The notes: generated by a model from the letters alone, not told the origin. 64,000 bases of DNA from Girardia tigrina (GCA_001938485.1 MQRK01216436.1:1-64000), one strand, 5' to 3'. Shown: positions 17,957 to 46,807, counted from the stretch's first letter. Numbers and translations: made by a program.

Positions 17957-19556
17957 ATTAACAAAAAATAATGAGATTGTTTCTCAAATTTTTCATTCAT
18001 ATAAATAAATGTATTTTCTCTTATTTTTTATTTAACTAAGGTTGTACATGACACGAAAGAAAACGTAATTTGTAAACTAACACGTTAAAACCCAAAAGAA
18101 ATTATTTTTACTTATGAAACATAAATATTGATCACAGGGGTCTACTTATATTACTTATAATTCAATATAGTGCTTTATGCAGCGACAAGGTTTTTTTAAA
18201 GCAGTCTTAAAGTTCACATCTAGTTCTTTAGACACATGGGCTGCACTATTTACCATTTTTACAGTTTGATGTAAAATAAACAATACATTCAGCAAAAAAG
18301 CATAAATTTCCAAATGTTTTGCAATCATAAGTAAATTTTAATCTGCACTTGATAAAAATCTGACTGGAGCAGATGTTCAAACCTTGAAATGTATTCGATT
18401 AGTAGACATTTGATGAACATTAAATCTTTATGTTTCAATGGATAGTCATCGAATGTATTTGCTTCTTTAATTTTTTCAGAAGTACTGCCTCTCGATTTCT
18501 AACTTGTTTTTCTGGAAAGATGAAACACACTGCCAGTTAGGAGCAGTTTGTTGCATTCATACTATGACTCTACCATACTTATGTGTTATATCTATACTTT
18601 AACCTTTTATAGATTCATTCATACCTCAACCTTTTATCGAAATGAGTGTCCAACTGTGTTGGGATTTTAAAACCAAAATATAAATGATTTAATAATTAGA
18701 CAATTAGACTCCCGATAGAGTTTACGATTTTTGCCCGATGCTCGAGTCCCAACTAAAAATTAATTGAAAATAACGATTACCAATTTGTGTAAAAACACCA
18801 AATATTTCAATGATTTATTTGATTCAATTCAAAATGTACAAAGAATCCAATTATAAATACACCGCTCTAATGATTGGAGATTATTAAAATAAAATATTTT
18901 TTTGAATAGTATTCCTTAAATATTCTCAAATACTTTTCTTATTCAATGATATTTTTTGGTTTAAATAAAAATTTTCTTTTTTGTTTTATGTGTGTGACTT
19001 TAACTAAAAATTTGTGAGTATTTAAACCCAAATTATAATTTTAAAAATTTAAAGAATTTTAAAAATATTTTCTTTATTGGAGATTAAATCTCCTTTTTGA
19101 ATTTTTGTTATTTTTTATTTCTCCCTTAAAAAAATCCTTAGTTGGTGCGCGCTACATGAATGCACCCGAGATTATGCAATCAGGTTCAAGTACTTTCAGG
19201 TAGGTTTTCCCCAATATTTCATTTTTAATTGTGACCGAAAAATGTAAGTTCTTTTACACTCTTTTATAATAATGTCAATAATAATACTCATATTAAGAAT
19301 GATAAATGTAATAACAAAAATGTTATATAGCATTAATACTAATTATAATAATATTTTAGAAATGACAATAATAATAATATGTTACGATCGACACTTTCAA
19401 CCCCATATTTGACCCCTTCCATTCATTGCACCACCCCGTGAGCACAGAATTTTGGTGGAGTTCGGGAATAGTCAAACTCGACTATTCCCGGTTGCGTTTA
19501 AATGTTTTCCGTGCGTCAACAGGGCGGTGAATTCCGAAAGGGATCTGTAAGTAGGC

Positions 19557-20249
19557 CTAATAGTGATTAAGGGCCGGAGAGGTTGAGACTGACCGTGAGC
19601 TGAGAAAAACAAATTAATTAAAACCAAAAATCCCAAGAAGACCATACAAGCTCACCTGAGGGCAATAGAGACCGGAAAAGGGATACAGACGAAGATCATA
19701 AACAAGGAAGCGCCATAGTCTTGAGAAGAATCGAAAAAACGTCCCGGAAAACCCTGAGAAGCCCTCAAAAAGATCTAAAAAAATTAAAAACAAAGTTAAA
19801 TTAATTAAGAAAATTAATTAAAAACAAACCATCATCCAATTGCCAGACAGCTGTGAAGGTGGATTCCGGGTCATCCTGAATGAGAGATAATTAAATCAGA
19901 ATATCTCTATTAAATGTTTACCCGAACTGCACAGTCCACTTGAATGCCGGTACAGTCGCGGAGATAGGGAGGCCAGCGGTATTAATTATCTAAAATATAA
20001 AATAATCCGGTAAACAGATGTCAGATAAACATACATCAATAATTACCTTACCATAATGATTCCCCCACTTCTTCTATTCTGGCGCTGAACCAGATACCGC
20101 AGTGCAGACATCGCGAACAAATGCACAACCATCCTGTCCTTAGATAATTTCGACAAAACAGATGGTCGCCGGGTAGAGAGGACATCCTGAGATAACGATA
20201 GTTTAAAAAAAACGATTAAGTAAGAGGACAGGCAGGATAACACAATCAT
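19557..20249 (-). CDS. Predicted antisense spliced ORF in family A U3 (157 aa; exons 20249-20052, 19989-19922, 19875-19830, 19774-19656, 19599-19557)
   Basis: Four GT-AG introns of 62, 46, 55 and 56 nt; the frame stays open to TAG at 19557; contains RASQGFPGR. The start codon is uncertain. Confidence 0.55.
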
Positions 20250-21361
20250 GTTTCTCCCCCCTCTTTTAATCCTGTCGAATAAACAAAATTCACATAACAA
20301 ACATGCATGCAGACCTCCCGAGAACGTCGGACTGGGTGTGCAACCAATCAGGTATATATACCTTGCACATCCTGACGGCAAACACACACTTTTCACTATA
20401 CATCATTTGCGCACTTTGATTACACGCAAATTTATATACACTTTTATATTGAAGTAAGCTCAACACTATTTCACGATATTCTGCGAAAGCTAGAACAATT
20501 CCCTCACGCAATTGAAATAAGAATCTGGTTGAATTTTAATTTAATTTAATTTTATTATTTCACTGTATTGGTAACGTCAATGAATATTTTACTTGGGTAG
20601 CTCACTTTTATTCAATATATTTTTATTATTATCATTTGTTGGTTTTATTCATTTCTTCAACTTTATTTTCTGTCGATAGTATTTCATCATAAAGGGTAGA
20701 ACTGAGGGGTCGATCCCCAAATACCAACCAAGCGAGAGTGCAACGGGAGGTAATTAAGACAGTCGGGGATGACGAGAGAAGTGTGGGGAGATCTTGTGTA
20801 AGAGTTAGGATGGTATTTGTAAATATTGTAGATAAGGATCGGTCGCGATTAGTAAGGGTAGTTAGTAAGTAGATGGTGGAGTCGTTCAAAGTGATTAAAA
20901 AAATGGAAAACTGGCTGAGATTTATAAATAATTTATGTATAAATATATCAAAATTCGAAAACCAATTGAAAATATTTATTAATTTCGACGGTTTAACCGT
21001 CATCGTCAGAACAAATGATTTTTCAAACGAAATTTATTTATATAATGCAGTTAATGATTATGCAATCAATGCGTAATCAGTGCATCATTTAAAAACTCTC
21101 AACAAAGTTGTAGAGAGTGCAGTTTGAACGTTAATTTTAGGATCCAAAGATCTTATATATAACGCTTCACATGTCACTCTCTCCCAATAATTTTTAAATA
21201 TATCTTAAATATAAATATATATAAATATATCTTAAAGTGATAAATATATAAATATATCTTAAGTGATTTACTAAGAAATTGTTATATTATTGCTTTCTCA
21301 ACTAAGATTTATAAATAATTTATGTATAAATATATTTTAAGTGTATTTTAACAATTGTAAT

Positions 21362-24196
21362 TGTGAGGAATATTTTGAATGTTTGATGTTTTGTGTTTGA
21401 ATGTGTTTGAATTTGAAAATGAATAAGCATGAACTAGACTATTGCATTACAAGGAAAGAACTACTTGCAATTTATTATTTCACATAGCATTTTAAACATT
21501 TCTTATATGGAAAAAGATTTTTGTTGCGAACAGATCATAAAGCTATTACGTTTATGATGACTACAAAGAACCCTATCACACCACAGTTCCAAACATGGAT
21601 AAATTTTCTGAATAGTCTTGACATGAAAATGGAATATTGAAAAGGTGAAAAACATTCAAATGCTGATGCAATGTCAAGAAATTCGTGCGAACTATGCAAT
21701 CAGTGTCAAACAATGCATGAAGAGGCCAAGAAAGGAAAGATTAAAACAAGAATACTGGCATTAAGTGAAGAATCAGATGGTTTTAAATGGCAGAAGAATA
21801 ATAATGAAATAAAACAAATAATCGAGGACATAAGTAAAGGTAAAACAAGAAAATGGGCATTAAGGAATGATATTTGTAAAAATAGATATTAGAACACGAT
21901 GGTAAATATCTATTTTTACGATAGAATAGATATAAAAAATATATAATGTAAAAATATATAATTTCAATTAAATAACGGATGGATAAAATTTATAACAGAA
22001 ATAGTGATAATTGTTCCACGAATATTTAACGAAATAAATTAATGTTACGCAATGGATCTTCTCAAAATATCTGGAAATGAAGTGAGAAGGAATTTCTTTT
22101 CTTTTGTAATACGGTAATCTAGGTAGACGATGATTTTCCAAGTATATAATATAGATATTGATAATATTGATAATGTTAATGTGTTGATACGAATAAATGA
22201 TAAATCTTCTTACTCGTTGAATATTTGGACCGATATCAGGATATTCAAGGTATTTAGGTAAATATAGTCAACGAAAATATTATTAATTCTGCTGATATAG
22301 CAATATTGATTTTGTGATCGATTTGCATATTTGGTAAGTTATTTTGATAAATTATTATTTTATTGTTGATTGGGGAATTAATTATTTCTGCTTTGATTTT
22401 GACTTTCTTTCTTTCTTTTACATTCTTTTAAATTTTCTTTATTTGATCTTTTAATTTTTTAACTTGCGCTAAAAAAAAATAAATCACTTTCTGGACTTGA
22501 CAACAAAAAATAAATAACATGCTGTTTTACATGGTCGAACTAAAAAATTATATTTGTACATTTAACCAGGAATGAAATTTATCACAAAAATAAAAAACAT
22601 AAAAAATAACAAAAATCGCATGCCATAAAGGCAAATAAAAAATACATATATATTGAAAAGCTTTAAAAATTATTACATAACCAAAAGGTATTAAAAAAGA
22701 AATGAAAGCGTAGGAAATCTGTAGAAGTAGAACAAAACTTTGTCACTCACGAAATAAGTAGGGCACTACAATATCGTCATAAATCAAGAAAATAAATACT
22801 GGATCCCAAAGGCAGAACGAGCAAATTTTATTGAAGAAATGCACAAATTGTTGTGTCATGCATGTTGTAAAAAGGTCTATAACTACCTCTGAGATGATTT
22901 CGACATGGAAAATATAAGAGCATTTATAAAAGAAATAGTTCAAAGTTGCATAAATTGTCAGAAAAGGAAGACACTAACAACCAAAACAAAAGAAAAGCAT
23001 ATAAAGCAATTAGCGGATGAACCTTTCCAGAAAATATACATTGATTTTTGTGGACCATTCAAAAGAAATATAAATGGATGTCAATATATATTTACAATAA
23101 TTGACCAGTTTAGTAGATATATTAGCTTGAATGCAGCAGCTAGTCAAGATGAAAAAACAGTTAGAAAATTATTATTTGACAGATGAATATGGAAATTCGG
23201 ACCACCAAAAGAAATCCACGTAGACAGAGGAAAAACATTTGAATCGGCTTTGTTCAAGGACATGGCGAAAAAATTTAAAATTGAGGTGTTTTATTCGAGT
23301 CCATATCATCATAACACAAATGGAATCGTGGAAAGACAGTTTCGCACGATTAGAGATGCTTTCAATATTAGAATGAAGGATGGAGATCATAAAGATTGGA
23401 CAGAAGTCTTATCAGAAGTCAAGTTTATGTTAAATAGTACTGTACAAGCTCCGACAGGCATGTCNNNNNCCGAGATAGTATTTGGAAGAAAACTGAGACA
23501 TTGGTGGAAGAACAATTACGAAGATAACAAAAATTTGAAAGCAGTTGAACAAAAAACAGAGACAAGAAGAATTTTTGAAGTCGGAGACAAAGTATTAATT
23601 AAGAAGGAAAATGTCTCAAAAGAAGATGACCGTTACATGGGTCCCGCAACAGTGGTGAAAAGAAATCATGAAAGAAGTTACGAGTTACAGCTTGAAGATG
23701 GAAGAAGTTTTATTAGAAATGTTGAATGGGTAAAGCAATTTAAATCGAGGGGGATGTGAGGAATATTTTGAATGTTTGATGTTTTGTGCTTGAATGTGTA
23801 TGTTGATTTGGAAATGTGTCTCTCCTACCCAGATGGATGATTAATGTTTTAATTCTTATTATCTAAAAATATGTAATGTTTAAATTTATTTCTAATTTCA
23901 AATAATTTTAAAATTTTAAGTAAGTTAATTAATTTTTATAATATTTAATAAATAAGTCAAATTAATATTTTTTAAATAATTAATTATCATTTTGATTATT
24001 ATCCAATAAGTTTTGAGTGAATATTTTATTAAAATATTTATTTCCCCATTTTCTAAAAAAAGTAATGAGAATTAAACCATCAATCAATTTTCGCTTTGAA
24101 TGCAAATGTACGAAAGTTTTGACAAAGATTGTTTTGAGGACAATCAAAATTGTTGTTTAAATAAAAATATAAAAAATCAAATTGTTGTTCTTAATA
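21362..24196 (+). mobile_element. Deleted Gypsy family B provirus (truncated 5' LTR, RNase H, integrase, PPT, 3' LTR 23756-24196)
   Basis: TGTGAGGAATATTTTG at 21362 and 23756; RKELLAI, LRTDHKA, YIDFCGP, SPYHHNTNGIVER and GPATV motifs; PPT GAGGGGGA; 5-bp TSD GTAAT. Confidence 0.9.
21875..22770. mobile_element. Solo LTR (896 bp) nested in Gypsy B pol
   Basis: TGTA...TACA termini; TSD ATAT(T/C); pol reads ...RNDI|VINQENKYW across the insertion. Confidence 0.75.
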
Positions 24197-26005
24197 GTAA
24201 TATTATCGGTTTCTCAACTAAGATTTATAAACAATTTATGTATATATAATTCTCGAGTGATTTATAAGTAATTGTAATATTATTAACTTCTATACTAAAA
24301 GGTATCAAATATTATTAACTTCTTAACTTCCTAAGTGATTATAAATATGAATGCGATCCAAGGTAACTAATTGATCGAAAATTGTTTAAGAATTCCAAGT
24401 TTACTTCGGTCATCTTAAAGAATATTTTACCAGATCAAGTAAAGCTTTGTGAAGCACAGTGTCTAATACGAACAAGATCGAATGAGTCAACAAAGTAATT
24501 GAGCATCTTTCTATGAAATCGTGTATCGGATTACAGAAATGCGTCGATCACATTCTTGAAAACGATTGTGGAGTTTCAGGCCATCTACTTAGAAATTTTA
24601 AATTTAAAAAAAATCAAGTCAATATCTGAAATAAAATCGAATAAATAAAATAACTTATAACATTAAATCTTCTCGCATTTACAGTTACTTATTCGTAGTC
24701 TACGAAATGAATATTTCATTTAAATTGTTGAGATTTTTAACTCGATAGAGTAATCACTAGCCTGTAGTTAACTGTTCGATAGATCTGAGCGTAAAAATTA
24801 ATTAATCAGAACAAACTCCAAGGGGTGCTAATCTTCATACCCTTAGTTTTCAGAGTTATAATAAAAGCAATCTATTCTGTTAACCTTTTGTAATTAAACT
24901 TAAATAAGAGCATTTCAACCAAAGTGTCCTTTTATCGTTAAATAAAGGTCTTGGCTGTAGGGAGACAATATGAATTTCGAAACAGTGGAAATCATCAAAA
25001 TAAACGTATACTGTATTGATAGTAAGAGACAATCCAACGTACAAAGAGTTAACAGTGAAAGGGTAAATAAAAATTGACCATCCCGTAAACCATTAAATTT
25101 TGTAATAGCTGGAACAAATAATGAATGAGAGAATATAATTTGAAATACTTAGACAAAACTATTAACGAGTCGAAGAACCCTTTGGAGATGACGCAGGTCG
25201 ACCGCAGAATGCATAGGGGCACGCGGTCCGATCGTCGTTTACTTCCTTAAGGCTCTTTTCGTCCAAAGCACGATATATATATATATATAAAAGTATAAAA
25301 TAAATCTGAATGCAAATAACAAAATAAAGTCATCAACCTCTTCAGACATTGAGTTACCAGTCGGGCCATACTCGATACTGGTAGAGAACCCGAAGGCGCT
25401 CCGAAGCACACAAAAACTTATTGATGTGCGTGGAGGTGACGCGTCTGTTCCCCATGAGTGTAGTTTTAAGGTACTGGAGCGTAAATTGCGTGATAGAGTT
25501 GCCGTTGAACTCTAAAAAAACGGATGGGGGTTCTGAACTTACAAAAATGTTAAAAAAGGGGGGAACACGACAAATATAATTGATATAAATAATTACAGTA
25601 ATAATAAAAACATTACTAATAATACAATTTAATAATAGATAAGTAATAATAAATAAATAATACTAATAAATAAGAATAATATTCATTATTGACATAATCA
25701 TAACGTATTGTTAATAATAATATCAATTTATATAGTAATATTATTAATAATTTATTGATTTACTATTATATTTTTTTATATATCCATCTCTGTACCGACA
25801 TCATGGTGAGTTTTAATATTAATAATAGTAACGATGATTTATAATAATAATAATAATACTATTTTAGATTTTATTTTATGTATAGGTAAGATCTATTTGA
25901 TTACTTATTTTATATAATAATTATTATAAATTAAATAAATAATGATAATAATAGTATTAAAATTAAACGATAATATTTTTTTAATTATAAATACTTGGAA
26001 CCCTA

Positions 26006-29000
26006 TATCACGACCCCTTCGAGTGGGAACATTTTTGCAAGCTCATGAGCCCCCAGTGGTTGTTCAGGGTCAACCACGACCCGATATAATTCGCATTTAA
26101 CTATAATACATTTATTTTGTTAGGCGGTCAGACACATCTCCCACACCTGACATCTAACGGGTAGTGCCAGGTTTGGAGTACCATTGGGTTCAACTCAGTT
26201 AGAAAAGGCTATAGGCGCCCTAACTAGCTCAGCGCCGCTCAGGGCTGATTTTAACGTTAGTATTAATCATTTGTGTATCCTTTCTATGCGTGTCTCGCTC
26301 ATGTTTTGGTATATGAGCCCTGATTCTCTTTGAATAATTTCTCCTTGCGCACTCTGTTTGTACCCCTTAATAACTTGTGTATTGAATATGTATCAACGGA
26401 ATGTTTATTTGATTTTCTGATTTCCTAAATGATAAATTATTAGACACTTGAAATCAGTCACCGAAATTCATATTTTCGCTTTCAATCATAGATATTAACC
26501 ATTAAGAATTAATTATTAAATTAACTTTTAACCGTAGATATTAATCATTAATTTCAATTCACTGATTTTAGACATTTAGTTTTGAGTAGATCCTAAAAGA
26601 ATTCTTACCATAAAATTGTCAACTAAATTTTATTCATTCTATTGTCAACTAAAATTTATTCGCAAGAATCAAACTCCAATCTGGTCAATAACTAAATTTC
26701 ACTCATTAAATTTTATTTTCTCAAAACAAATATTTGTCTCGTTAAAAGAGAACTCGACTGTCTTTTTGGTAATTTCAGTCGGGAGACACATTAGTCACCG
26801 TTGCTTTTATTCACAGACATAAGCAATGACATATATTCACTAGCCAGAGAAACCAGTCAATCGCATTGATTATCTATTGACTTCATATCGATTTCTGTTC
26901 CTTACTACACCTATTCTTGCTTTACTATGCCAACAAGGCATTTATATATGTCAGATGACTGATGTATTATGTGTTTTCATCCATTTTTTATCGAATTAAT
27001 GGAAATTTTAATTTTATAAAGCAAATTTTATGCAAAGTTAGATTATTTTATATAATAATTTTTATATCAATTATATAAATTTTTTTAAAGATTTTAAAAT
27101 TTAAATAATAAGACCTTTTTAAAATAAATAACATTTATTAAATAAAATAACATTTATTCTAACACATCCTCTTTTAAAAGGGACTCCGGAAAAAATGTCT
27201 TGATATGCTTAAAATACTTCGATAAATTCGAGTATTCCTCTTTCGCAACCTCAGTTGTAATAAGGTTGACCAAGTACTCCACTTTCTGATGCTGAGAAAT
27301 ATCAGAAAATGCCGTTCTTGTGACACTCTTCCGGACGCTTTGTTTGACCTTGCTGAAAACCGCTTCGATCGGATTCAGGAAAGGGGAGTACGGAGGAAGT
27401 TGCATAATTTCCAAGTGATTTGGGGTTGTTATTCCCAGATGTATGGAAGCATTATCGTGGATAATGTAATGCTTACTTTCGGGCAATTTCGCGATGAGTT
27501 CGCTAATGAAGGTTTGATAAACCTCCCGATTAACGGAACCACTTACCACTTTGTAATGGACGGGTCCTTTCTTCGATATTGCCATGATTAAACTCTGGTT
27601 CCTCCCTCTATTAGATGGAACTGTCGCGTAGATCCTGGTTCCCTTTCTTGACCGTCCAGTGGTTTTTCGAGTCCAGAGGCCCATCTTGTCCACATAAATA
27701 CATTCTTTCGAAGAAATTGCTTTCTTCAAAAATTGATGGACATATTGTGACCGTAGGTCCTTCACCCGATCACTATTGCGCTGCTCCACAATATTTCTCA
27801 CCTTATTCACCGTATAAAATCTTCCATCCAAGAATCTGGCGATTGTTGAGGTGGAACAGGAAACTTCAACACTGTCGATTAAATATTGCTGAATTTCTTT
27901 TAATGTAACTTCTGGATGCTCTTCTATATAATCCATGATTTTTGTTGCTGCATCCTCCTTGATGATACATTTCTTGGGGCCACCGATATGCCCAGTTGAT
28001 AATTGTCCTGTTTTTCGGAACCTGTAAATGATTACGCGTACGGTGCGCCGTTTTAACCCCAATTGATTACCCAAGAGGTAATAATCTTCATCCATTTCGA
28101 AGGCGTTGATTATCCTTCTTTTATCCACCTCAGATACCCTAATAATTAATTCAAACTTGATCATAATTGAAAAAATACATTTTTCGGTCTCTCTTCTTGC
28201 TCGGTTCGGTATTCTCCGATGCGGTCGATGTGCTGTAAATAATATATTGATAATTATTATCTAAAAAACCTTTTATTTACCTTTCTTCGCGACATCTTTC
28301 GGTTTCCGAGCTTGCGCTACTTATGTCAGAGTAGACTGCATTCATAATTTTACAAATTAATTGTAAAATTTTTAAAATGTATATGTAATAATGATTATGA
28401 ATATATAATAATGCTTATAAAGAAGGTGTGTTTGTTGGTATGTATGGTTTTTGTGTGTGTGTCTAGTGTGTTTGTATTGAGTTTGCATGCCACTTTTTTT
28501 GTAACCTACTTATTTACATATATTTTAGACATAGTCACTTGGTCCGAGCCTTATGCAAATGACTGTCAAATCAATTTTGATTGGTGAGGTTATTTTTATT
28601 CAATAATTACATATTAAGTTCTTTACAGGAATATAACCAAATGCTTTCCTGACATTTTCAAACGAGAACAGGTGTAGTGATATAATATAATTACATATCG
28701 ATTTTCATTCTCTGTTGGGTATTTAACAAGCTCGCAATTCTTTTTCCGGATTATTGGAAATCTATTCTGACACGGCGACATCTCGCTCTTTCTCATGATC
28801 CGGATTATGACTATCAGCATCTGAATTAATGGTATATAACCGGATTATTTTCAATGCCCTTGGCTTTAGGACATGTCGAATTCGTTAAAGAAGGGAGGGA
28901 CTATGACGACACTTAACTTGGTGGCTCTAAATTAACTCACCAACGGCGAGATCACACGAATCTAAAAGTGAAACTATTTATATAAATATGTATTTCAAAT

Positions 29001-30002
29001 ATAACACGAATTCTGATAAAATATATTCAACGAATCAAAATAAAGCACATTAAGTAACACGAAATTTACATTATTTCTAATCTTCTTGGATCGGAGGAAA
29101 GTTCGTCTATTGGTTTTCAGATCTCGATTAATTATCTCATGAGTTTTGTTCACTAATTTTCTAATTCTTCCACTTGTAATCCACAAAATTGCGTTATACT
29201 ATGTGGTTCTAATCATATGAAAATCGTCCTAATGGTCTCGAAATGTTGGTTCCAAGTGCTCTCTTCAAAATGCTCTAATAATGTTCTGCAATAAGTGCTG
29301 TTCGAAATGCTATTGTTCTGTTCTAAAACGTTCAAAAATTTTCAAATGTTTTAAATGTTCTGGTTTTTGCTCATCGGGCCACTGTATATATAACAGCATT
29401 TTCTCTTGGTGTTGTGTACACTTCATCGCGTAGTCTTTGATTGGTTGTTACTGCTGATTTTATATTCTATTTATCGAGACATGTGGTTCGTGCGAACTTC
29501 AGTAAGCGAGACGTCATTTCGGATATACCCTGCTACTCTTAGAAAATGTGGTCTGGATTAATCACCGATTATTCATAATGAATAATCGCGTGATTCTTAT
29601 TTTGGACTTGTGGACTTACTCATGGTAATTTTAATTAATCTCTTTTATCTTAATTAATTTTTCATGATATTTCAGGGCTTTATATCTTTTTGCTGGCCGA
29701 CCCAGCTCGGGATTGAAATACAGCCACGGGTAACAGGCGAGAGGGGCTTTCTGGGGATATCTGGTTGACCGATTTCCCCCATCAGGTGAGCTCTGGAGCG
29801 ACATCGCGTATTTTAGCTTATTTATATAACGTTCAGGACCGGAAAACTACTCTCAACTTTCCGCTGGGCCGGGTGACTACCTGAGACTATTTCGATGACT
29901 ACGATGATATATATGACTGATATATAATATCTATTAATATATGTATGACTGCCTTTGCATTATTTTATATACTCTTTAAATGTCTGATTTTCGACGGCAA
30001 CA
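26006..30002 (-). mobile_element. Family A-related 3' LTR (minus orientation) containing a Tc1 insertion
   Basis: U5 end T(A/G)TCACGACCC...GCTCATGAGCCCCCA matches 62954. The 5' end reads TGTTGCCGTCGA on the minus strand, preceded by the purine run AGAGGAA. No TSD. Plus-strand introns at 29625-29675 and 29786-29836. Confidence 0.65.
27154..28345 (-). CDS. IS630/Tc1 transposase, intact frame, two 5' introns (exons 28345-28281, 28232-28179, 28138-27154; 367 aa), DD29E
   Basis: GT-AG introns of 48 and 40 nt join ATG 28345 in frame; paired-like HTH, YVDK, HDNASIH and LPPYSPFLNPIE motifs. Confidence 0.85.
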
Positions 30003-30266
30003 TTCCTCTGGGTACCATTGAAATCTCGACCCGAGATTTTACAACAAAATAAAAGTATAAAATTAAAGATACAGATAAGAACACACAAGATATGGAAAGA
30101 TAAGTGTCAACTAAATTAAAAGCAAGATACTCATTCGAACATTCACATTCAATCATAGTAATAAATATTTCATGCGTAATGTATATTAAGTTCAGTTCAC
30201 CAATGTTAAATATTGATCACGCCATTGTTATATTTACAGTGTTATATCAAATAAATTGTCGTATTG

Positions 30267-31017
30267 TTAGTAGCTGGTGATGCAGTAAGGATCAGCCAGC
30301 ACTCGATTCACTTGAGGTGTAATCGGCCTTATGCTCGTGGTTCGGACTGGTGGTCGAATCTGTGCATAATTAAAACAATTTAGTTCTGTCGTTATTCGTG
30401 GTGGATCAGAGAATTCGCTCGGGTTCGGCACTCTGGCAATGATGTCTTTCAGTTCCCTTCCGATCCGGGCTTGTGTATCGTACTCAATTTTTTGTTCGAT
30501 CGGTTCTGGTATTAAATTATCTGGACCTTTTGGAGTCTCATATTTTCGTCCGCCGGTGAGTATTTTTGTTCTGGCTTCTTTCTTTTGCCGTAAGCGTCGG
30601 TTATAATACAGATGGATGTTGATACAGCTCATAAAGATTATACCGGCAAGTGCAGCTGAAAAAATGATTATTACAATAAGTCTACCTGTCGAGGATGTCA
30701 CTTTTGCAATCTTTTTTATTAACTTTGTAGTGACACCTTCAGTTGATTTTGCCGTTTTTGTCGTAATCCTTTCCGCTCTCTCTGTTATTAGTTCGATAAT
30801 CAGTGGTTTTTCTGGCAGCGCAGGTTGCAATTTTTGGGAACAGGTATTCCATTGGTGTTAAATATTTATGGTTCTGTTGATAAACCTCGTCTTCGTATTG
30901 AGGAGATACGGTTTGTATTTCATCGCCAATTACTAAGTATTCTTGATAATATGCTGCTACATAATCGCCGTAATATTTTGTAGTTCGATAAAATTGTTCG
31001 ATATTGAGCCACATCAA
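30267..31017 (-). pseudogene. Type-I membrane protein ORF (one frameshift near 30835, 5' truncated) in the env position upstream of the family A 3' LTR
   Basis: Thr-rich stalk, TM LIVIIIFSAALAGIIFMSCINIHLYY, basic NRRLRQKK, and a ~110-aa tail with YETP, YDTQ and YAQI. Confidence 0.55.
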
Positions 31018-34502: not shown

Positions 34503-35544
34503 TGTGAGGATCGATTTAGCAGATACATCAGTTTGAACGCAGTAGCTCACCAAGACAAGAAAACCGTGCGAAAGTTATTACTTGACAAATGGATTCTGAA
34601 ATACGGACCACCAAAAGAAATCCATGTCGATAGAGGAAAAACATTCGAATCAGCCCTTTTTAAAGAAATAGCAAATAGATTTACAGTTGAGATAGTATAT
34701 TCCAGTCCTTACCACCACAATACCAATGGGATTGTTCAGAGAATTTTCAGAACTGTAAGTAGCGTTTATGCCACTTTCATTATTATCACATTCTAAAGCC
34801 ATAATTTAACACCACCAAAAAATTTATTACTATAACAATTCACATTTCTAAAACAAATTTTNCTGTTAATTTAATTTAATTATCTCGACCCAAATTAATC
34901 TATTAAATTCTTTTCGATTTAATTTTTAAAACCCTGAAAATTTATTTCGAAAATTTATTTCAAAAAATTATTTAAACTTTATTTTCAAATCAATTTTTAA
35001 AATTTCTTATTAAAAATATTTTTATTTATAAATAGGAAACTTTCTTTAGAAAAGAATAGGAAAGTTTCTTTATAAATTGTATTAAGAACACCAATTATTG
35101 TATTAAGAACACCAATTTGATTTTTTATATTTTTATTTAAACAACAATTTTGATTGTCCTCAAAACAATCTTTGTCAAAACTTTCGTACGTTTGCATTCA
35201 AAGCGAAAATTGATTANNNNNNNNNNNNNNNNNNNNNNNNNNNNNNNNNNNNNNNNNNNNNNNNNNNNNNNNNNNNNNNNNNNNNNNNNNNNNNNNNNNN
35301 NNNNNNNNNNNNNNNNNNNNNNNNNNNNNNNNNNNNNNNNNNNNNNNNNNNNNNNNNNNNNNNNNNNNNNNNNNNNNNNTTAAAATTTTAAAATTATATG
35401 AAATTAAAAATAAATTTAAACATTACTTATTTTTAGATAATAAGAATTAAAACATTAATCATCCATCTGGGTAGGAGAGACACATTTCCAAATCAACACA
35501 CACATTCAAACACAAAACATCAAACATTCAAAATATTCCTCACA
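34503..35544. mobile_element. Gypsy family B debris: integrase fragment (+) and inverted LTR (-) spanning a gap
   Basis: KYGPPKEIHVDRGKTFES...SPYHHNTNG; 35080-35544 is the reverse complement of LTR 23756-24196. Confidence 0.8.
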
Positions 35545-37458: not shown

Positions 37459-38100
37459 TGTTACGAAGAGGCTTTCCATTTGTTTAACAAAGGTAGGGGA
37501 ATAGTCTAACTCGACTATTCCCCAGTGCGTTTAAATATGCCCGTCTGACACAGTGACACCACGAACCTTAGAGATTCAGGAGTACCATGTCAAACAGAGC
37601 CGGATTCTTTGGCCCCCTCGTCTGAAAGAGCCTTGAAGAAACCCTGAAAAGAAAGAATTAAGAATTTTAATTAATTAAGTAACTTACCAAAGATGATTCA
37701 GTATGAATCATGGAAATCCACCGTCTGTTAATCTCCGCGGTAGGTCCCGGGCGAATGACAGCGACTTCTTGTATAAACAACTGTCATAATAATAATTTAA
37801 CTTAAGAATAATTTAATTTACTGAATCTGCAGAAGCGATAAACATCGCGAGTGCCTGTAATTTGCGCGCCGACATTCTGTGCATTTCGACCGGTGGGGTG
37901 ACTGCAGTCTGCAACAATTGCAGATGTAGCATCCGTGAATCGCTGATGCCACAGTGACCTCCCCTCTACCCTGCCTCGATGGTAAACCGACACTACACAG
38001 ATTCTAATAAACATGAATTGAATTTGACAGGAAGCCCGACTGTAATTCAGTACTGTAATGTGTACACGTGGACTATACTACACTGTAATACAGCTCGATA
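37459..38100 (+). mobile_element. Family A LTR, U3 fragment
   Basis: TGTTACG start; GGGAATAGTC-N6-GACTATTCCC hairpin shared with 19463; minus-strand intron at 37687-37644. Confidence 0.7.
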
Positions 38101-38236
38101 AATGGAATTCATCAGTGTCACTTAGTTGTTTAATGTTCAAAACAATATTTTGCCGTTTTTCCGCTTAATATTATCAGCCGGTTTATGTAATCAAATGTAG
38201 GCGACCCAATGTGATCACATAAAGCGGCGCCCACTG

Positions 38237-38282
<46 letters not shown>

Positions 38283-38286
38283 CATA

Positions 38287-38691: not shown

Positions 38692-39057
38692 ATATATATA
38701 TATATATATATATATAAAACTTTTTCTGATTTCTCTTTATTTCTTTATTAAATAGTAAATTTCCAACAATGTAATTTGCAAACTTCGACGGGTTATCTTC
38801 TAATACCCAATCACACATACCATTACACACACAATCATATACACCAACTGTAGTGATTTCAAAAAAAATTATTTTTTTTAATTGTAAAATTTTGTAAATT
38901 ATAAATATTTAGAATTATTAATTAAAAAATTTTTTTAGCTTAAAATTTTTATGCGCATAAGTGATTGTGAATAAAATGATCGGTAGTGTGGATTCTGGGA
39001 TTAAAAAAAGAACAAAGATTTGTTTTTCTGATGCAATTTGAAATTTGTCGATGGAAA

Positions 39058-39470
39058 ATGAGTAATTTTCCCGGTCTTAGTCGTTACTTGCTCGTGTTCA
39101 TAACATTCGTTATCGTTTGTTGCTCGTATTATGCGTACTTTATCGAAATGTGTATTTTTTGGTCAGAAAATATTGTTCAACCAATTTTTCATATAATAAT
39201 TTATCATTTATTGGTGATTTTTTTCTTGTATTCTTATTTCAAAGCCGTTATTTCTGAAGCGCCACCAGCTCCATTGGAGTTTTATTTAAACTCCGATGAG
39301 CACGCAGTAGTACTGGGTTTGACTGTAGATAAAGTAAATTGGAGAAAGTATTTGGAGGAATTAGCGGCGACGAAGAATCTCAAAATCTATTCTCGCGACA
39401 TCGGAGAGAACGTGAGATTCTGCACGTTTTGCCAACTTATCGAACTTGATCGAGGGCATCACTGCTCGAC
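39058..39470 (+). pseudogene. ZDHHC2/15/20-like palmitoyltransferase, truncated before the DHHC motif
   Basis: SYYAY TM1, TM2, PP.EFYL and RFC..CQLI..DR.HHCS, followed by unrelated repeat sequence; intronless. Confidence 0.8.
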
Positions 39471-39699
39471 TCGCAATAGTTTGATCAACAACCGCGTCCA
39501 TTCAAACTGCATCGCACGTGGGCTAGATGGCGCCCTATTCCGAATAATATTGTGCCATCTGAACTCGGTAATTTAATTTTTGCTGTATGTAATCTTCTCG
39601 ATTCATTTGAGAGTGAAAGTGCCGTGGTTTCAGGTGCTCGTCTGATCGCCGATTTCAGCCTCTCGCCCGTCCCATTTTACCAACATTTTTACTTTTTAA

Positions 39700-40330: not shown

Positions 40331-41065
40331 GTTAAATTTTTTTTCATCAAAATAAAAATATGTATATATTTTTTTGTGCACACAGTGTTGAAATTTCAAA
40401 TAATGTTTCCAAAAAAAATTAAAAAAAACAATGATGATTTGAACGGCTAACAAATGCCAATGGTCAATTTGTTTTAATGGTGTAATTTGTAAATAAAACA
40501 AATACAAAAATTTTGAATATAAACATTTTTTAATCTTAATCAACTACACAATATTCATTGTCGACAAAAATAATTTCGATTTTGATCCTGCAAATCGGTA
40601 ATTTTGGTGAGGATGGTCGGTATACGTTCTAACTCAATCAACGACCGAACCATTTCAAATTGCATCGCACGTGGGCGAGATGGCGGCCCGATACTGCTTG
40701 ATGATGCGCCTGTTACTCTGTTATCAATGATTATTATTATTATTATTAGCAATAATCATTGATAACAGAGTGGGTGGCGCAGTGGTGTAACTGCGGCGGA
40801 TTGGTGACGGTTGCGACTCTATTGACAGAGGGGAAGAACAAAATAATATCTCACCCAGAAAGAGAGGAAATAAATAGTCATTTTTTGATTTTTAAGGTCA
40901 TCAAATTCCGTGCCCTACTAACAACTTTTTTATAGTAATGGGATAATTTTAGTTCAAAATATTCGTTTTTTTAATATAGCTAATATATTTGATTATGAAT
41001 ATTTATATATTCGAAATTAATTCAATATATTAAGTAATCAATAAATAATCGATATTTCATAATTG

Positions 41066-42517
41066 TGTTACGTTCCACATTTTGTACATCAAACCTAGAC
41101 GCCTTTCACCCATTACATTATCCCGCGCGCATGAAAGTTTGTCAGAGTTGTGGGGATAGTCAAACTCGAATATCAATTTGGCTGAACCAGTACTCATTCC
41201 CAAGGATCCCTCATTTTATTCTTCGTCCAGCGCACATGGAATCATTTAAAACTAACCGGTTAGTTTTAAATGATTCCATGTGCACTGGACGAAGAATAAA
41301 GTGAGGGATCCTTGGGAATGAGTACTGGTTCAGCCAAAACCTTGTAGAAATCCTAAAAAGAGAAACCGAGAAAATTAATTAAGAGTTTTCGATTAATTAA
41401 AATTATTACCCTGATGATTCAGTCTGAACCACAGCATCCTCCAACTGTCTGTTTCTGCGGTAGGTCGGCAGTAGCTAAAACAACGATAAACAGTCAGAAC
41501 GAAAAACCCGAACGCTTACCTCAGATAGAAGTTGACACACTGTGCATTCACAGGCTGGGTCCATTGATAAACAAGCCGGTTTTCGCCGATCGCAGTAGTC
41601 AGGACCGCAGGACAGGTAACATAAACATAGTTCTGAAAATCAAAAATTTACAAAACGAAGATTAAAAATAATAACCTTTCTCCTCGCAATCTGACGTAGA
41701 TCGACAGTTGTTTATCTGTCGATTCGGTTTGACAGGATGTCGCGACATCCTTTGTTGCAGTCAGTCTCGCAGTAATCGGCATACAGAATGCAGAACCAAC
41801 GAGTTTATGTGTATCCGATAGGGGTATAAATACCCGAGGATGTTGTGCTCAATTTGCGAGAAAGTTGATTAATTCACGCAAGCACAAGCGCACACTCAAT
41901 TTTATAACTTTGATAATTACGCCAACAACAACAATAACTTAATTTTTATAACGTAAATAACGTAATTCATAGAAGAGAATAAATTTAAAGAGACAATTTT
42001 AATTAACGACGATAAATCTCGAAAGAAGATTTTCACTGCTACGATTACGATATTTATTGGAATGGAGAAAATATTAGAAAAGGTATCACCCTTGTTTGAA
42101 TTGAGTGGTTATATTTCATTTAATGTTAATTCGCGCATTTTTATAATTGTATCTTTGATCATTAATTTAATAGAATATTTTGCGTTACATCTTTATTATT
42201 TATGCACATCCTTAATGTCGTTCTAATATATATTCAGTTTATTTTGATTTTTATTATCTGATTTAGCCAGTTTAATTATTTTGATTCGGATTCTATTAAA
42301 TAAATTAAATAAATATTTCATTACAATTGAACATTTCACTCCTTTTGATTATTTAATTTGGTTATCAATTTCGACTGGAAATAAATATCGGTTTTCTTTT
42401 ATTGAGTTTTCGAGTCATGTAGAGGGAGATGGAATTAGAGCGAGAGAATAGACGACGGTGGTTCGCTTCCGTACCCAAGAGATCCAGAGTGGGGTTCTTG
42501 GATACCGATGCGTAACA
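41066..42517 (+). mobile_element. Family A-related LTR
   Basis: TGTTACG...CGTAACA termini; degenerate GGGGATAGTCAAACTCGA hairpin; minus-strand splice signals; TATAAATA at 41825; no TSD found. Confidence 0.6.
41177..41338. repeat. 162-bp spacerless palindrome (81-bp arms, 2 mismatches)
   Basis: Centre AACC|GGTT at 41257/41258; arms read directly. Confidence 0.95.
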
Positions 42518-42951: not shown

Positions 42952-43955
42952 TGTAACGATGCAAGATGTGGCGATATTAAGTGTTGCGATGGACATGTTA
43001 AGTTCTAATGTGTGCCATTAAACCCCCACAGATACAAAACAATAAATAAGCAATAAGCAAAGCATTAACAAACGAGCTGTAGAGTAAGACGAAACCGCGT
43101 TTGAAAAGGTTTATTACGAAGACATCACATGGTCGTGAAGTTTTATTATCATCACAGACTGTCGAAGTTCTCTCCAAGAGCCGCAGCTAACTGAAAACCA
43201 AATACGATAACCTAGAGCCCCGAAAAAATAATGACGACTTTCAAAAGAGTCAGAGAAAGAATTGTCAGATACCGACACTGTAGAAAGTCCCCTCGAAGTT
43301 GTCTGCCACCGCCACTCCTTCATAATCCTTCCCATAAAGCCTTGAAAAGCTCTTTTACGGTCCTATAAAATAAATGAAAAATTAAAAAAATCCATAATTA
43401 ATTATTAAAAATTAATTATAGAAAAGTCCAAAATAGAACTGCGACATGAATCTCATGCTGATCTTCGAACATCCGCGTCGGTCTGTTGTAAACATAATGA
43501 TGATTATCTAGAAATGAATAAACAAAACATCAACTTACCAGGAAAGACGCACAACGACAGACGGCATAAACAGACGCGAATAAATACCGCCAAGCAATCG
43601 GTTGCGTGGAGTCTTCTGTAACTATGTAAGCGTCGAGAGACGAGGATGACTGCACTAGGAGATAAACAGTTCGCCAGACATCATCCACGTACCGCGCATA
43701 AAAACTGAGAACGACAGCTGTTTAGAAATTGTTTCCCCAGAAACGAATAAACATACCAAAATGAAACCGACATTACACATCACTCACCGTATGCTGTTTC
43801 AGAAATGTGAGTGACAGACCATTTGTATAAACAAAATCATGTTTTCGCAGTCGGTTATCCACTCTGTCACAGGTAATGGCTATAAAAATTAATAATAGTC
43901 AACCAATCGTGTAGGTGTTATGGCAAACCCGATAATCCTGGACTGACCATTGGCG

Positions 43956-43957
<2 letters not shown>
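42952..43957 (+). mobile_element. Family A-related LTR, U3 fragment, cut by (TA)n and hATm
   Basis: TGTAACGAT start; minus-strand acceptor at 43363 followed by DRKRAFQGFMGR; TATAAAA near 43881. Confidence 0.6.
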
Positions 43958-43998
<41 letters not shown>

Positions 43999-44614
43999 GG
44001 TGCATCAAACCCCCTCATAGTTGAGAATTCTATTGTACCTATTCTAATTTTTTAGTAATCATGTAAAAATGTTTCACGTGAAATTTCAGCAAAATTAAAC
44101 ATTGTTTAGGGGGTCCACAGTACAAGTCCAGAATTACATGTAACGTAAAAAAAGTGCGTTTTTTTCAAAATATTGAATATTTTAAGGGCTAATTTTAAAA
44201 CAGTCTAAAATTAGTATTGGTGTACCATAATCAAATTAAAACAGTTTTTCTACATATAAATTTTCTNNNNNNNNNNNNNNNNNNNNNNNNNNNNNNNNNN
44301 NNNNNNNNNNNNNNNNNNNNNNNNNNNNNNNNNNNNNNNNNNNNNNNNNNNNNNNNNNNNNNNNNNNNNNNNNNNNNNNNNNNNNNNNNNNNNNNNNNNN
44401 NNNNNNNNNNNNNNNNNNNNNNNNNNNNNNNNNNNNNNNNNNNNNNNNNNNNNNNNNNNNNNNNNNNNNNNNNNNNNNNNNNNNNNNNNNNNNNNNNNNN
44501 NNNNNNNNNNNNNNNNNNNNNNNNNNNNNNNNNNNNNNNNNNNNNNNNNNNNNNNNNNNNNNNNNNNNNNNNNNNNNNNNNNNNNNNNNNNNNNNNNNNN
44601 NNNNNNNNNNNNNN

Positions 44615-46807
44615 CCCCCCACCTAGCGGAGCGTCGCTCGGGGATGATTTTACTCCAAATTGATTTCTAAGCCTTAGTGTTATGTACATTGTGTAGTGGG
44701 AACTTACGGCGTTGTTGTGTACGTTTATAACTTGTTGCATTTGTCTGTTTATGACGACTTACGGCACTGGATGTGTTGTGTGTTATTAACTTGCGGCATC
44801 GTGTATATCAATGAAGCATTGTCTTAGAGTGCAGCGCATAGGAGCGATCCTGAATGACCGTCATATTATCGGGGAATCAACAGCAGCTTCAATCAATTTT
44901 ACTCCGAATCTATCGCTTTATCAGTCGATTTACCTACTGGGTCGCATTTATTATGAATCTGTACTTTACTCAATTCATAAACTTCTTATATTTTTTAGGC
45001 TTAGTTATTAGATTCGTACCCGTTTCAATAAGAAAATTAAATAGCTAAGAACGTATATAACTAAATCGATATCACTTATCTTACTTAATTGGCTATCGGA
45101 AAATTATTACAAATTGATCGTTTTTCTCATTCTGGATTATGAATTTGAGACGACTCACTATTGCTTTATATTATACGATCTCATTCAGTGTTGCTTCTAT
45201 TCTTAATCGTTTGGTCGATAATAATAAAAAAAATCGGATATTACCTATAACTTAACAAAAAATTCACCCAAATTTCCTGACGTATCTTTCATATAAAGAA
45301 AATATTCAAATGAATAATCAATCTAGATCATAGAAAATTTTAGTGAAACTCGCGAGTCCAAAGAAAATGTTCAAATTAACAATCTACATCATAAGAATAC
45401 CAATAAAATTAATAACTACTATAAATCATAAAAATTTCAGTAAGATTAATAACTAATATAAATCATAAGAATTTTAGTAAGATTAATAATTAATATAAAT
45501 CATAAAAAATTTTAGTAAGATTAATAATTCGCAAAAATCCCAATAAAATTATATTTGTTTTAGTAAATCAATTAGGTGTATTTTTTCTGTCAACAAAACA
45601 AATCGTATGTTCACAGATTGATCACCCTACGTATGTCAGTATTCTCGGTTAGCGCGTTCGGTAAGCGCGTACGGACGGCCCCACCCCGTTAATGTGCGGG
45701 TCGACGTGATGACCGGCCTCGAATTCAGGTCGGATATCGACCGGGTGTCGATGATTATAGGAAGTAATAATTCTTCGTCGCTCACTTGCGGGACCGCTAT
45801 CCAAAACGAGACTTGGGCCATTGAGGGAGCAACGACGGGGACGACGGTCGTTCAATAGGAAATTCTAAACGTAAGTTATGTCGTAATTCTACCTAAAAAT
45901 CAATTTGTTTGTCCCGGTATATCATTATGCAGAATTAAATATGAACAACTATGAGTTAAAATCGAAACAGTGTATAAATATATATTCAAATACTACATAA
46001 ACAAAATTACGTTTCTCTAAATCTGCTACTGACGTATCGGTTNTCCGGAGGAATATTAAAATCGTTGTTTAGTGTTGAGTTGTGGCGTTTTTTTGTTGCG
46101 TTGTTTAAGTGTTGAATGTTTTTTGTGAGTACTTTTGAATGTCATTTCCTTTTATAGGCCTACAGGGACTCACTGGTCCTAAACTTCTCCAATCGGTTCT
46201 TTGTCTAGGATTTTCTGGAATTTTGATTGGGTGGACTTTCAGGTGTGTTCTTCTAAATTTTTAAAAATTTTAATTCAATTCTTTTTATTATAGGATTTGG
46301 CGACTGTGTGTCGGCTCACACACAGCCACGACGAGACTCCGTGTGCGGCCATATGAAGTCGCCGAGTTATTTTTAGATTGTGAGCTGAATCATGTGAGTT
46401 TTTTAATTAATTTCTTTGTTCTCATTAATTAATTTCTTTCAACTTTATAGGGTCATATCTCCGCTGAGGAAGACCGCAATGATTTGCGATCGAGCTCAAT
46501 TTCCCGACCATGTCAAGACCTTCCGCTGAAGGGTCGGCTGGCCCCGAAAGTCCAACGGATTGCCCTACAGGTAACTTATGATTTTTTGTGTCTGGTTTGA
46601 TTTAATTTATTTCTCGTTTTCAGCCCCCAGCCTCCGATCCTTCCGCGGGGTGCACTACGTCTCCAACACTTTGTATGATATATGTGTATTTGTTAATATA
46701 TGTATTTCTTCTTCATGCGTTTTCTTGCTTAATTAAATTTTTTTTTTGTAATTAATTTATATTCATATATAAATATTTGTCTGGTAAAGCGGGTATCGAC
46801 CGTAACA
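44615..46807 (-). mobile_element. Family A LTR (minus orientation) inserted in hATm; left end lies in a gap
   Basis: Minus-strand start TGTTACGGTCGATAC; minus-strand TATAAAAG at ~46156; ATTGCCCT(A)CAG|GT junction shared with 19655. Confidence 0.75.
46139..46755 (+). CDS. Predicted antisense spliced ORF in family A U3 (151 aa; exons 46139-46242, 46294-46393, 46451-46570, 46624-46755)
   Basis: Three GT-AG introns (51, 57 and 53 nt); open from ATG to TAA; hydrophobic segments at both ends. Confidence 0.55.

What the first reader, a model, noticed from the sequence alone, without database searches (positions are those of the whole stretch)
19380..46807. Giant-LTR family carrying an antisense, multi-intron gene inside U3
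Seen in sequence: six family A LTR copies (19380, 30002, 37459, 41066, 42952, 46807) have GC-rich exons separated by short AT-rich GT-AG introns (mostly 44-62 nt). In the five copies where a TATA box is visible, the introns lie on the strand opposite it. Splicing gives a stop-free 157-aa frame in the 19380 copy (4 introns) and a 151-aa frame in the 46807 copy (3 introns); these two share the IAL|intron junction and a TSP(A/T)L motif. The 19380 and 42952 copies start the homologous exon in the same phase and encode RASQGFPGR vs RAFQGFMGR, with four synonymous codon differences (AGG/AGA, CAG/CAA, GGT/GGC, CGT/AGG). The 30002 copy has stops. Inference: the LTR is a bidirectional promoter expressing its own small accessory protein or spliced regulatory RNA, so even solo LTRs carry a gene. 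Antisense transcription from an LTR is established for HTLV-1 HBZ, but I do not recognise a multi-exon gene wholly inside an invertebrate retrotransposon U3.
Basis: partly seen in the sequence, partly recalled or inferred. Interest (0 to 1): 0.9.

Follow-up and report, generated by a model that had tools for sequence, protein, structure and literature searches.

The report
LTR-like repeats carrying short introns
A family of old, much-diverged mobile-element ends (probably solo LTRs) in an AT-rich animal-type genome carries short intron-like segments on one strand, but the "gene" they would splice together shows no sign of encoding a conserved protein.

Summary
The six places are real members of one very diverged repeat family. 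Each ends in the same 12-13 nt terminus (...ACA). Five of six are re-found by leave-one-out profile search.

The family is mobile. Two units (4213-5567 and 19380-25572) have identical 14-nt ends (TGTTACG... / ...CACGACA) and 4-bp target duplications. Family A is one end of a longer unit, and a better-conserved "family B" block is the other end. No copy flanks gag-pol in this window, so "LTR" is likely but not proven.

The intron-like segments are well beyond chance. There are 10 loci with good donor and acceptor consensus against 2.7 expected from composition-preserving shuffles, all on one strand.

The 157-aa and 151-aa spliced frames exist. They are only marginally unusual once the choice among candidate introns is allowed for (p about 0.02 each). 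They share no protein similarity, lack the codon-position bias of real genes in the window, and have no homologues or domains. The other four copies have no long frame.

The best reading is a spliced, probably non-coding transcription unit in the variable (U3-like) part of an LTR. It resembles the multi-intron antisense RNAs of HeT-A and TART. It is not an accessory-protein gene. No RNA data were available.

The parts
19380..20420 (-). Family A copy 'c19380' (intron strand = minus). Candidate introns 20051-19990, 19921-19876, 19829-19775 (the shared central intron, with two TTAATTAAT motifs) and 19655-19600. 11-bp hairpin at 19463-19490. Terminus at 19380.
19380..25572 (-). Whole unit to which c19380 belongs. 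A end at 19380 and B end at 25572, with the same 14-nt termini as the 4213-5567 unit. Flanked by AATA/AATA. Contains a nested gypsy-like remnant.
25132..25572 (-). Family B block (R-U5-like, better conserved) of the c19380 unit.
21362..24300 (+). Nested gypsy-like remnant, not part of family A. RNase H tail and integrase domains, then a G-rich polypurine tract and its own LTR type. 5'-truncated (gag, protease and RT absent). The frame is interrupted at least three times and holds one short N run.
4213..5567 (-). Seventh family unit, outside the finding. Short A terminus (4213-4390), AT-rich middle, B block (5151-5567). Flanked by GAAA/GAAA. Sits immediately upstream of an RNase H-like open frame that is open from the first base after the insertion. 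Lacks the exon-intron module.
29330..30002 (+). Family A copy 'c30002'. Central intron 29625-29675 and last intron 29786-29836. Terminus at 30002. No long open frame.
26007..26297 (+). Diverged family B block, probably the other end of the c30002 unit, with a Tc1-type transposon nested between them. No matching target duplication was seen.
37459..38230 (-). Family A copy 'c37459'. Central intron 37687-37644 and a weak candidate 37821-37781. 11-bp hairpin at 37496-37523. The last-intron region is missing.
41066..41900 (-). Family A copy 'c41066'. Candidate introns 41675-41633, 41519-41475 and 41409-41353 (central). A 162-nt perfect palindrome at 41177-41338.
42952..43950 (-). Weakest member, 'c42952'. 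It has the terminal motif (also at 42982-42993), the shared AT-rich block without a GT donor, one 31-nt candidate intron (43538-43508), and an 82-codon open frame at 43117-43362.
45950..46807 (+). Family A copy 'c46807'. Introns 46243-46293, 46394-46450 (central) and 46571-46623 (last). Terminus at 46807. Spliced frame of 151 aa.
53428..53763 (-). Further family B block. Its 5' tip lies apart at 57708-57793 (minus).
62954..63246 (+). Further family B block, close to the one at 26007. The unit runs toward the window end.

Best explanation
The six places are old, strongly diverged copies of one end of a long TG...CA mobile unit. They are most likely solo or fragmentary LTRs of an LTR retrotransposon family whose internal part is not in this window. 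The unit has a variable part (family A, U3-like) and a better-conserved part (family B, R-U5-like).

Inside the variable part, on the strand that is probably antisense to the element, lies a small transcription unit of about 0.7-0.9 kb with one to four minimal spliceosomal introns. I think this unit is transcribed and spliced into a non-coding RNA, or one carrying only non-conserved ORFs. That would be comparable to the multi-intron antisense RNAs of the HeT-A and TART retroelements. It is not an accessory-protein gene.

Shown: the family, its ends, the target duplications, the splice-signal enrichment and its strand bias, and the lack of coding signal. Inferred: LTR status, orientation relative to the element, transcription and splicing in vivo, and any role such as antisense regulation or small-RNA precursor.
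For: Family and mobility:
- Shared terminus.
- Identical 14-nt ends and 4-bp duplications in two units.
- One unit sits directly against an RNase H-like frame that is open for 130 codons from the first base after it.
- Family B copies occur at five places.

Introns:
- 10 loci against 2.7 +/- 1.5 in local shuffles, none on the other strand.
- 7 of the 9 strict intron-like segments in the whole window lie in the family.
- The central intron position is shared by five copies and the last intron by three.

Non-coding:
- No protein similarity between the two long frames.
- Random identity in the equal-length exon.
- No first-position purine bias.
- No domains and no homologues.
- Gaps in matching stretches are mostly 1-2 nt.
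- Four copies have no long frame.

Orientation: B is 78% conserved while A is barely alignable.

Precedent: multi-intron, non-coding antisense transcripts of HeT-A and TART (PMC2615633, PMC1636488).
Against: - There is no RNA evidence at all.
- No copy is attached to gag-pol, a PBS or a PPT, so LTR status and orientation rest on inference.
- The unit with the cleaner target duplication (4213-5567) lacks the exon-intron module.
- The AATA duplication of the 19380 unit lies in low-complexity DNA, so its chance probability is about 0.06.
- The two long spliced frames are still somewhat unusual (p = 0.025 and 0.015), and both end in the last exon. That is what a translated mRNA would look like.
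- Only six or seven degenerate copies were available.
- No further copies were found in the public collections reachable here.
Confidence: 0.5

Rival explanations
1. One reading: the LTR carries an antisense, multi-exon gene that encodes a small accessory protein.
For: - Splicing restores frames of 157 and 151 aa in the two copies with the most introns.
- Dinucleotide-shuffle p = 0.001-0.004, and p = 0.025 and 0.015 after allowing for intron choice.
- Both stops lie in the last exon.
- A 9-codon stretch shared by two copies has four synonymous codon differences.
- The IAL junction and TSPxL are read in the same frame in two copies.
Against: - No similarity between the two peptides.
- The exon body is random at nucleotide level.
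- No codon-position bias.
- No Pfam hit for any exon.
- No homologue among 5.8 and 1.8 billion proteins.
- Four copies lack a frame.
- A homologous motif is non-coding in one model and coding in the other.
- The tail of the 151-aa frame is a translated T-rich spacer.
Confidence: 0.1
2. The introns are in sense. The intron strand is the element's own strand, so the introns lie in a long leader (R-U5 or 5' UTR), and unspliced RNA is the copy that propagates.
For: - TATA-like and CCAAT-like strings lie upstream of the exons on the intron strand.
- Block B read on that strand also has a TATA-like string near its start in one copy.
- Retroelements do keep sense splice sites in RNA that is propagated unspliced (PMC10309623).
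Against: - The TATA-like strings are palindromic or not conserved between B copies.
- The conserved block would then be U3 and the variable block R-U5, the reverse of the usual pattern.
- The intron strand is the T-rich strand in all six copies.
- Another element in the window begins its 3' LTR with TGTTAC right after a G-rich polypurine tract.
Confidence: 0.2
3. The exon-intron module is a fragment of a host gene that the element picked up in reverse orientation, so its introns survived, and it is now decaying.
For: - The module is absent from one otherwise close unit, 4213-5567.
- The exons are GC-rich islands unlike the rest of the unit.
- Gene capture by LTR elements is known (PMC7264820).
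Against: - No exon matches any protein family or protein.
- The splice signals are kept in copies whose exons are diverged beyond alignment, which is not what plain decay predicts.
Confidence: 0.12
4. It is not a mobile element but a local cluster of a fast-evolving small host gene or lncRNA family.
For: - All six intron-bearing copies lie within 28 kb of a 64-kb window.
- Each has upstream TATA-like strings.
Against: - A sharp shared 12-13 nt terminus followed by unrelated DNA.
- Identical unit ends plus 4-bp duplications.
- One unit lies inside another element's pol region.
- Further ends of the family lie at 4213, 53-58 kb and 63 kb.
Confidence: 0.05
5. The intron look is a by-product of alternating GC-rich and T-rich blocks and means nothing.
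For: With lenient criteria, local shuffles give 6.7-7.4 intron-like loci against 10 observed (p = 0.07-0.12).
Against: With a proper donor consensus the excess is clear: 10 against 2.7, and 7 against 0.8, with 0 of 400 shuffles reaching the observed number. All loci are on one strand. The positions are shared between copies.
Confidence: 0.05

Closest known systems
Antisense transcripts of the Drosophila telomeric retroelements HeT-A and TART (PMC2615633, PMC1636488)
   Same: An invertebrate retroelement with transcription opposite to the element from its promoter-bearing, polymorphic end region. Several short introns with good consensus sites. No long conserved ORF. Intron sizes vary between copies.
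   Different: Those are non-LTR elements and their RNAs were shown by RACE and ESTs. Here the unit lies in an LTR-like repeat, the orientation is inferred, and no RNA data exist.
HTLV-1 HBZ and other retroviral antisense genes (reviewed in PMC8622228 and cited in PMC7264820)
   Same: An antisense, spliced transcript that starts in an LTR.
   Different: HBZ encodes a conserved bZIP protein whose coding part lies mostly outside the LTR. Here no exon hits any domain, the frames are not conserved, and the whole unit lies inside the repeat. I compared no HBZ sequence. This comparison rests on the literature only.
Antisense additional ORFs of plant Ty3/gypsy elements: Grande gene23, RIRE2, Retand, PvRetro13 (PMC7264820, PMC11963269)
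   Same: An extra antisense transcription unit with its own promoter in an LTR retrotransposon, and products without database homologues.
   Different: Those lie between pol and the 3' LTR, not in the LTR, and are conserved within families. The frames here are not.
Drosophila hydei micropia antisense RNAs (cited in PMC7264820)
   Same: Non-coding antisense RNA from an invertebrate LTR retrotransposon.
   Different: It is complementary to the RT region and is not a multi-intron unit inside the LTR.
Ginger-type cut-and-paste transposons (from my own knowledge, not tested against sequences)
   Same: Termini of the TGTNR type and 4-bp target duplications.
   Different: The two ends of the units here are not long inverted repeats (6 of 11 terminal bases match, by eye), and no integrase-like transposase lies inside.

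Membership tests
LTR of an LTR retrotransposon (solo LTR) | Ends 5'-TG...CA-3' | tested here: met
   Two units read TGTTACG...CACGACA. The A terminus is shared by all six copies plus 4213.
LTR of an LTR retrotransposon (solo LTR) | 4-6 bp target-site duplication | tested here: met
   GAAA/GAAA at 4213-5567 and AATA/AATA at 19380-25572. The second lies in low-complexity DNA. None was seen for the 26007-30002 pairing.
LTR of an LTR retrotransposon (solo LTR) | Two copies in direct orientation flanking gag-pol, with a PBS after the 5' LTR and a PPT before the 3' LTR | tested here: not met
   No such pair exists in the window. The pol remnants present have other LTR types. This does not exclude solo LTRs.
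LTR of an LTR retrotransposon (solo LTR) | U3-R-U5 signals (TATA, poly(A) signal) in one orientation | tested here: inconclusive
   The TATA-like strings are palindromic. AATAAA near the B end occurs in one copy only.
Protein-coding accessory gene (HBZ-like) | An open frame conserved between copies | tested here: not met
   Two of six copies have a long frame, and those two share no similarity.
Protein-coding accessory gene (HBZ-like) | A recognisable domain or homologues | tested here: not met
   Pfam exon by exon gave none. Protein searches gave none or only low-complexity matches. The joined peptide was not searched.
Protein-coding accessory gene (HBZ-like) | Codon-position composition like real genes of the same genome | tested here: not met
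   Purine share at position 1 is 0.46 and 0.43, against 0.55-0.71 in six reference ORFs.
Spliced non-coding antisense RNA of a retroelement (HeT-A/TART type) | Several introns with consensus splice sites on one strand | tested here: met
   (in silico only).
Spliced non-coding antisense RNA of a retroelement (HeT-A/TART type) | The strand is opposite to the element's own transcript | tested here: inconclusive
   Inferred from the conservation pattern and strand composition. No full-length element was available.
Spliced non-coding antisense RNA of a retroelement (HeT-A/TART type) | The transcript and its junctions are seen in RNA | not testable with these tools
   No transcript data were reachable. 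The source genome seems absent from the protein collections.
Known RNA families (Rfam) | A match at the gathering score | tested here: not met
   None in the window. Sub-threshold matches are (TA)n and AT palindromes only.
Ginger-type DNA transposon | Terminal inverted repeats of tens of bases and an internal integrase-like transposase | tested here: not met
   The ends of the two units are unrelated beyond TGT. No such ORF lies inside 4213-5567.

The most novel reading that the evidence does not exclude
An invertebrate LTR family carries, wholly inside its repeat, a self-contained antisense gene with up to four introns. Splicing of it is maintained by selection, and its fast-evolving small ORF is translated, so every solo LTR remains a potential gene.
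Probability: 0.08. Interest if true: 0.8.

Novelty: new variant of a known kind. Interest (0 to 1): 0.4.

Why it matters
Suppose RNA data confirm the junctions. This would then be an LTR-type element whose repeat itself holds a multi-intron transcription unit, so hundreds of solo LTRs could each emit a spliced RNA.

That would extend the multi-intron antisense transcription known from HeT-A, TART and L1 to LTR elements. It would also give a simple system for asking why antisense retroelement RNAs are spliced: for export, for small-RNA production, or to escape decay.

As it stands this is an in-silico pattern in seven degenerate copies. The more striking claim, an accessory protein, is not supported.

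Tried and rejected
- Plain self-comparison (repeat finder, blastn at 1e-10) does not see the family. Only sensitive settings do.
- The Tc1 ORF as an exact look-up to name the source genome is not on record.
- Protein search with the first-exon ORF of the 19380 copy found nothing.
- The Sec22-like ORF used to place the organism gave one hit at 48%, so the organism was not identified.
- The profile-free search of 1.8 billion proteins with the 82-aa frame of the 42952 copy gave three weak multi-stretch matches in long proteins, which I read as low complexity.
- I read an RT by eye at 3471-3945. Pfam and PDB sequence searches did not confirm it, so I claim only the RNase H-like and integrase parts.
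- The match of the terminal motif at 6417-6428 lies inside integrase coding sequence and is chance.
- No terminal inverted repeats were found around the transposase-like gene.
- No telomere-type repeats were found.
- Two metagenome scans, with a conserved B stretch and with the conserved hairpin, found nothing.
- My first lenient intron test was not significant. The stricter one is.
- I considered the 19380 copy as the 5' LTR of the gypsy-like pol to its right. I rejected this because that pol has its own polypurine tract and a different LTR.
Full report
SETTING. The window is AT-rich (31% G+C) draft eukaryotic DNA with eleven N runs. It is a patchwork of transposon remains and gene fragments:
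- an intact Tc1-type ORF;
- gypsy-like and BEL-like pol pieces;
- a hAT fragment, plus tubulin, PLD, exonuclease, DHHC, Sec22-like, NEDD8-like and LRR pieces.
No tRNA or Rfam family is present. I could not name the organism. Exact look-up failed, and the best database relatives of window proteins are only 48-54% identical. The source genome therefore seems absent from the protein collections, and blank searches for family A carry little weight.

GAPS. The two gaps inside the finding's range lie between copies, not in them. The flanks of 35217-35379 are colinear with a paralogous LTR copy at matching spacing. Continuity across 44267-44614 is unknown. Nothing below depends on either gap, and I filled nothing.

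IS THE FAMILY REAL? Ordinary repeat finding misses it. Sensitive blastn gives short patches of 65-90% identity in a consistent orientation. On the intron strand every copy ends in the same 12-13 nt...ACA, followed by unrelated DNA. Leave-one-out profile searches re-find five of six cores at E between 1e-3 and 3e-13. The 42952 copy is not significant on its core. I call the strand with the GT-AG segments the intron strand. It is minus for 19380, 37459, 41066 and 42952, and plus for 30002 and 46807.

WHAT THE FAMILY IS.
- Searching the terminal motif found an exact seventh terminus at 4213.
- That terminus belongs to a 1355-bp unit (4213-5567). Its other end is a GC-rich block, here called family B, that recurs at 25132-25572, 53428-53763 (with its tip at 57708-57793), 26007-26297 and 62954-63246.
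- The units 4213-5567 and 19380-25572 have identical 14-nt ends (TGTTACG... and ...CACGACA on the plus strand) and perfect 4-bp flanking duplications, GAAA and AATA. Chance is about 0.007 for the first and about 0.06 for the second, which lies in low-complexity DNA.
- The first unit lies directly against an RNase H-like frame that is open for 130 codons from the first base after it.
- So family A is one end of a longer mobile unit with LTR-type ends.
- The 19380 unit also contains a nested, 5'-truncated gypsy-like remnant that has its own polypurine tract and a different LTR.
- No family A/B pair flanks gag-pol, a PBS or a PPT in the window. "Solo LTR" is therefore the likeliest label, but it is an inference.

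ORIENTATION. Block B is well conserved (78% and 64%). Block A is barely alignable even between units with identical termini. In LTRs, R-U5 is usually conserved and U3 variable. The TATA-like strings are palindromic and settle nothing. The AATAAA near the B end occurs in one copy only.

THE INTRONS.
- The named segments are GT-AG, 43-62 nt long and AT-rich. They have pyrimidine tracts and YAG acceptors.
- A whole-window scan with strict flank criteria finds nine such segments, seven of them in the family and all on the intron strand.
- A lenient test against shuffles that keep the local block composition was not significant.
- With a nine-position donor consensus the excess is clear: 10 loci against 2.7 +/- 1.5, and 7 against 0.8. 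No shuffle out of 400 reaches the observed number, and there are none on the opposite strand.
- The central intron, which holds two TTAATTAAT motifs, is shared in position by five copies. The 42952 copy has the AT block but no donor. The last intron is shared by three copies.
- I conclude that these are very probably real spliceosomal introns, or were when the copies were young.

CODING?
- The 157-aa and 151-aa spliced frames exist. I joined only script-predicted or shared introns, as they stand, to test the model.
- Against plain shuffles they are rare (p = 0.001-0.004).
- Allowing for the free choice among 324 and 80 intron subsets gives p = 0.025 and 0.015.
- The other four copies reach only 58-92 open codons.
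- The two peptides are not similar: Smith-Waterman score 24 against 28 +/- 4.6 for shuffles.
- The exon between the central and last introns has nearly the same length in three copies (119, 120 and 110 nt). It is only 24.8% identical between the two framed copies, which equals random.
- Matching stretches between copies lie in the AT-rich intron, the intron junctions and the non-coding terminus, not in the GC-rich exons. Their gaps are mostly 1-2 nt.
- The frames lack the first-position purine excess that six real ORFs of the window show.
- A CCAAT-like 10-mer shared by four copies lies upstream of one frame and inside the other.
- Exon-wise Pfam, the word-based protein search and the full HMMER search gave nothing credible.
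- The RASQGFPGR/RAFQGFMGR pair is real. It is a 27-nt conserved nucleotide motif that also occurs, with 1-nt indels and different distances from the acceptor, in two other copies.
- I therefore reject a conserved protein.
- One idea would explain why the frames end in the last exon. A spliced RNA with an early stop is exposed to nonsense-mediated decay, so openness might be favoured without any protein function. This is speculation.

OTHER CONSERVED PIECES. An 11-bp hairpin near the terminus is kept in two copies, with one compensatory change of the outer pair. It folds at -19 and -20 kcal/mol, z about -5. It is lost in a third copy.

COMPARISON WITH WHAT IS KNOWN.
- Multi-intron, non-coding antisense transcripts from the promoter-bearing end of a retroelement are established for HeT-A and TART (PMC2615633, PMC1636488).
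- Antisense genes are known in HTLV-1 and, between pol and the 3' LTR, in plant Tat-type elements (PMC7264820, PMC8622228).
- I found no report of a multi-intron unit lying wholly inside an LTR.
- If confirmed by RNA data, this would be a new variant of a known kind, not a new kind.

STEPS LEFT OUT AND SLIPS.
- The joined peptides were not submitted to any search or folding tool.
- The short patterns given to the DNA search were copied from the window.
The generic splice, TATA, CCAAT and poly(A) consensus strings used in scripts and by eye are also from general knowledge. None of this was used as evidence or sent to a database tool.
- One search failed on a coordinate slip of mine and was corrected.

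Noticed in passing
41177-41338: A perfect 162-nt palindrome (81-nt arms, 98% complementary; RNA fold -141 kcal/mol, z = -27) inside the 41066 copy, right after its central intron. It is a recent inverted duplication in an old copy. If transcribed it would be a long hairpin RNA.
   Followed up: partly
19463-19490 and 37496-37523: An 11-bp stem with a 6-nt loop, conserved in two diverged copies. The outer pair changes from C-G to G-C (one compensatory change). It is lost in the 41066 copy.
   Followed up: partly
46955-49368 (+): A transposase-like gene with no Pfam family. Its relatives (45-54% identity) occur in fishes, a spider, a shrimp and many metagenome contigs. Here it is in three reading-frame pieces (two frame breaks) with three single Ns. 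No terminal inverted repeats were found.
   Followed up: partly
27154-28164 (-): An intact 336-aa Tc1/mariner-type ORF (DDE_3 with paired-box-like HTH), probably nested in the 26007-30002 unit.
   Followed up: no
5568-7135 (+), LTR from about 7136: A BEL- or gypsy-like pol remnant (RNase H-like, integrase) interrupted at least four times. It is followed by a G-rich polypurine tract and an LTR that starts with TGTTAC but is otherwise unrelated to family A. RT-like motifs to the left (3471-3945) were not confirmed.
   Followed up: partly
7790-7903, 21240-21421, 23755-24300, 35066-35544: A third LTR type (start TGTGAGG/TGTAAGG). One copy is inverted around the N gap 35217-35379, next to a second integrase fragment (34533-34796). 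This suggests a rearrangement or an assembly problem there.
   Followed up: partly
60040-60530 (+): A zinc-knuckle gag-like piece and an aspartic-protease-like piece of BEL/Pao type, judged by eye only.
   Followed up: no
38986-39470 (+); 39484-39556 and 40637-40710: A DHHC palmitoyltransferase exon that breaks off just after the HHCS motif. It is followed by a short repeat that recurs 1.1 kb downstream, so the gene is probably cut by an insertion.
   Followed up: no
40705-40781: A 38-nt-arm AT-rich palindrome. It gives only sub-threshold miRNA-model matches.
   Followed up: no
61330-61803 (-), 58889-59243 (+), 58180-58664 (+): An intronless, very diverged Sec22-like ORF (best database hit 48%), a frameshifted NEDD8-like sequence and an LRR piece. 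These may be processed copies.
   Followed up: no
12965-13231: A tandem duplication of a 134-bp unit (96% identical).
   Followed up: no
30270-31017 (-): An open frame with one transmembrane helix and a basic tail, directly beyond the terminus of the 30002 copy. It has no family match. It could be a host exon or the tail of an element's extra gene.
   Followed up: partly
45377-45527 and 55518-55808: Tandem arrays of 37-nt and 42-nt AT-rich units.
   Followed up: no
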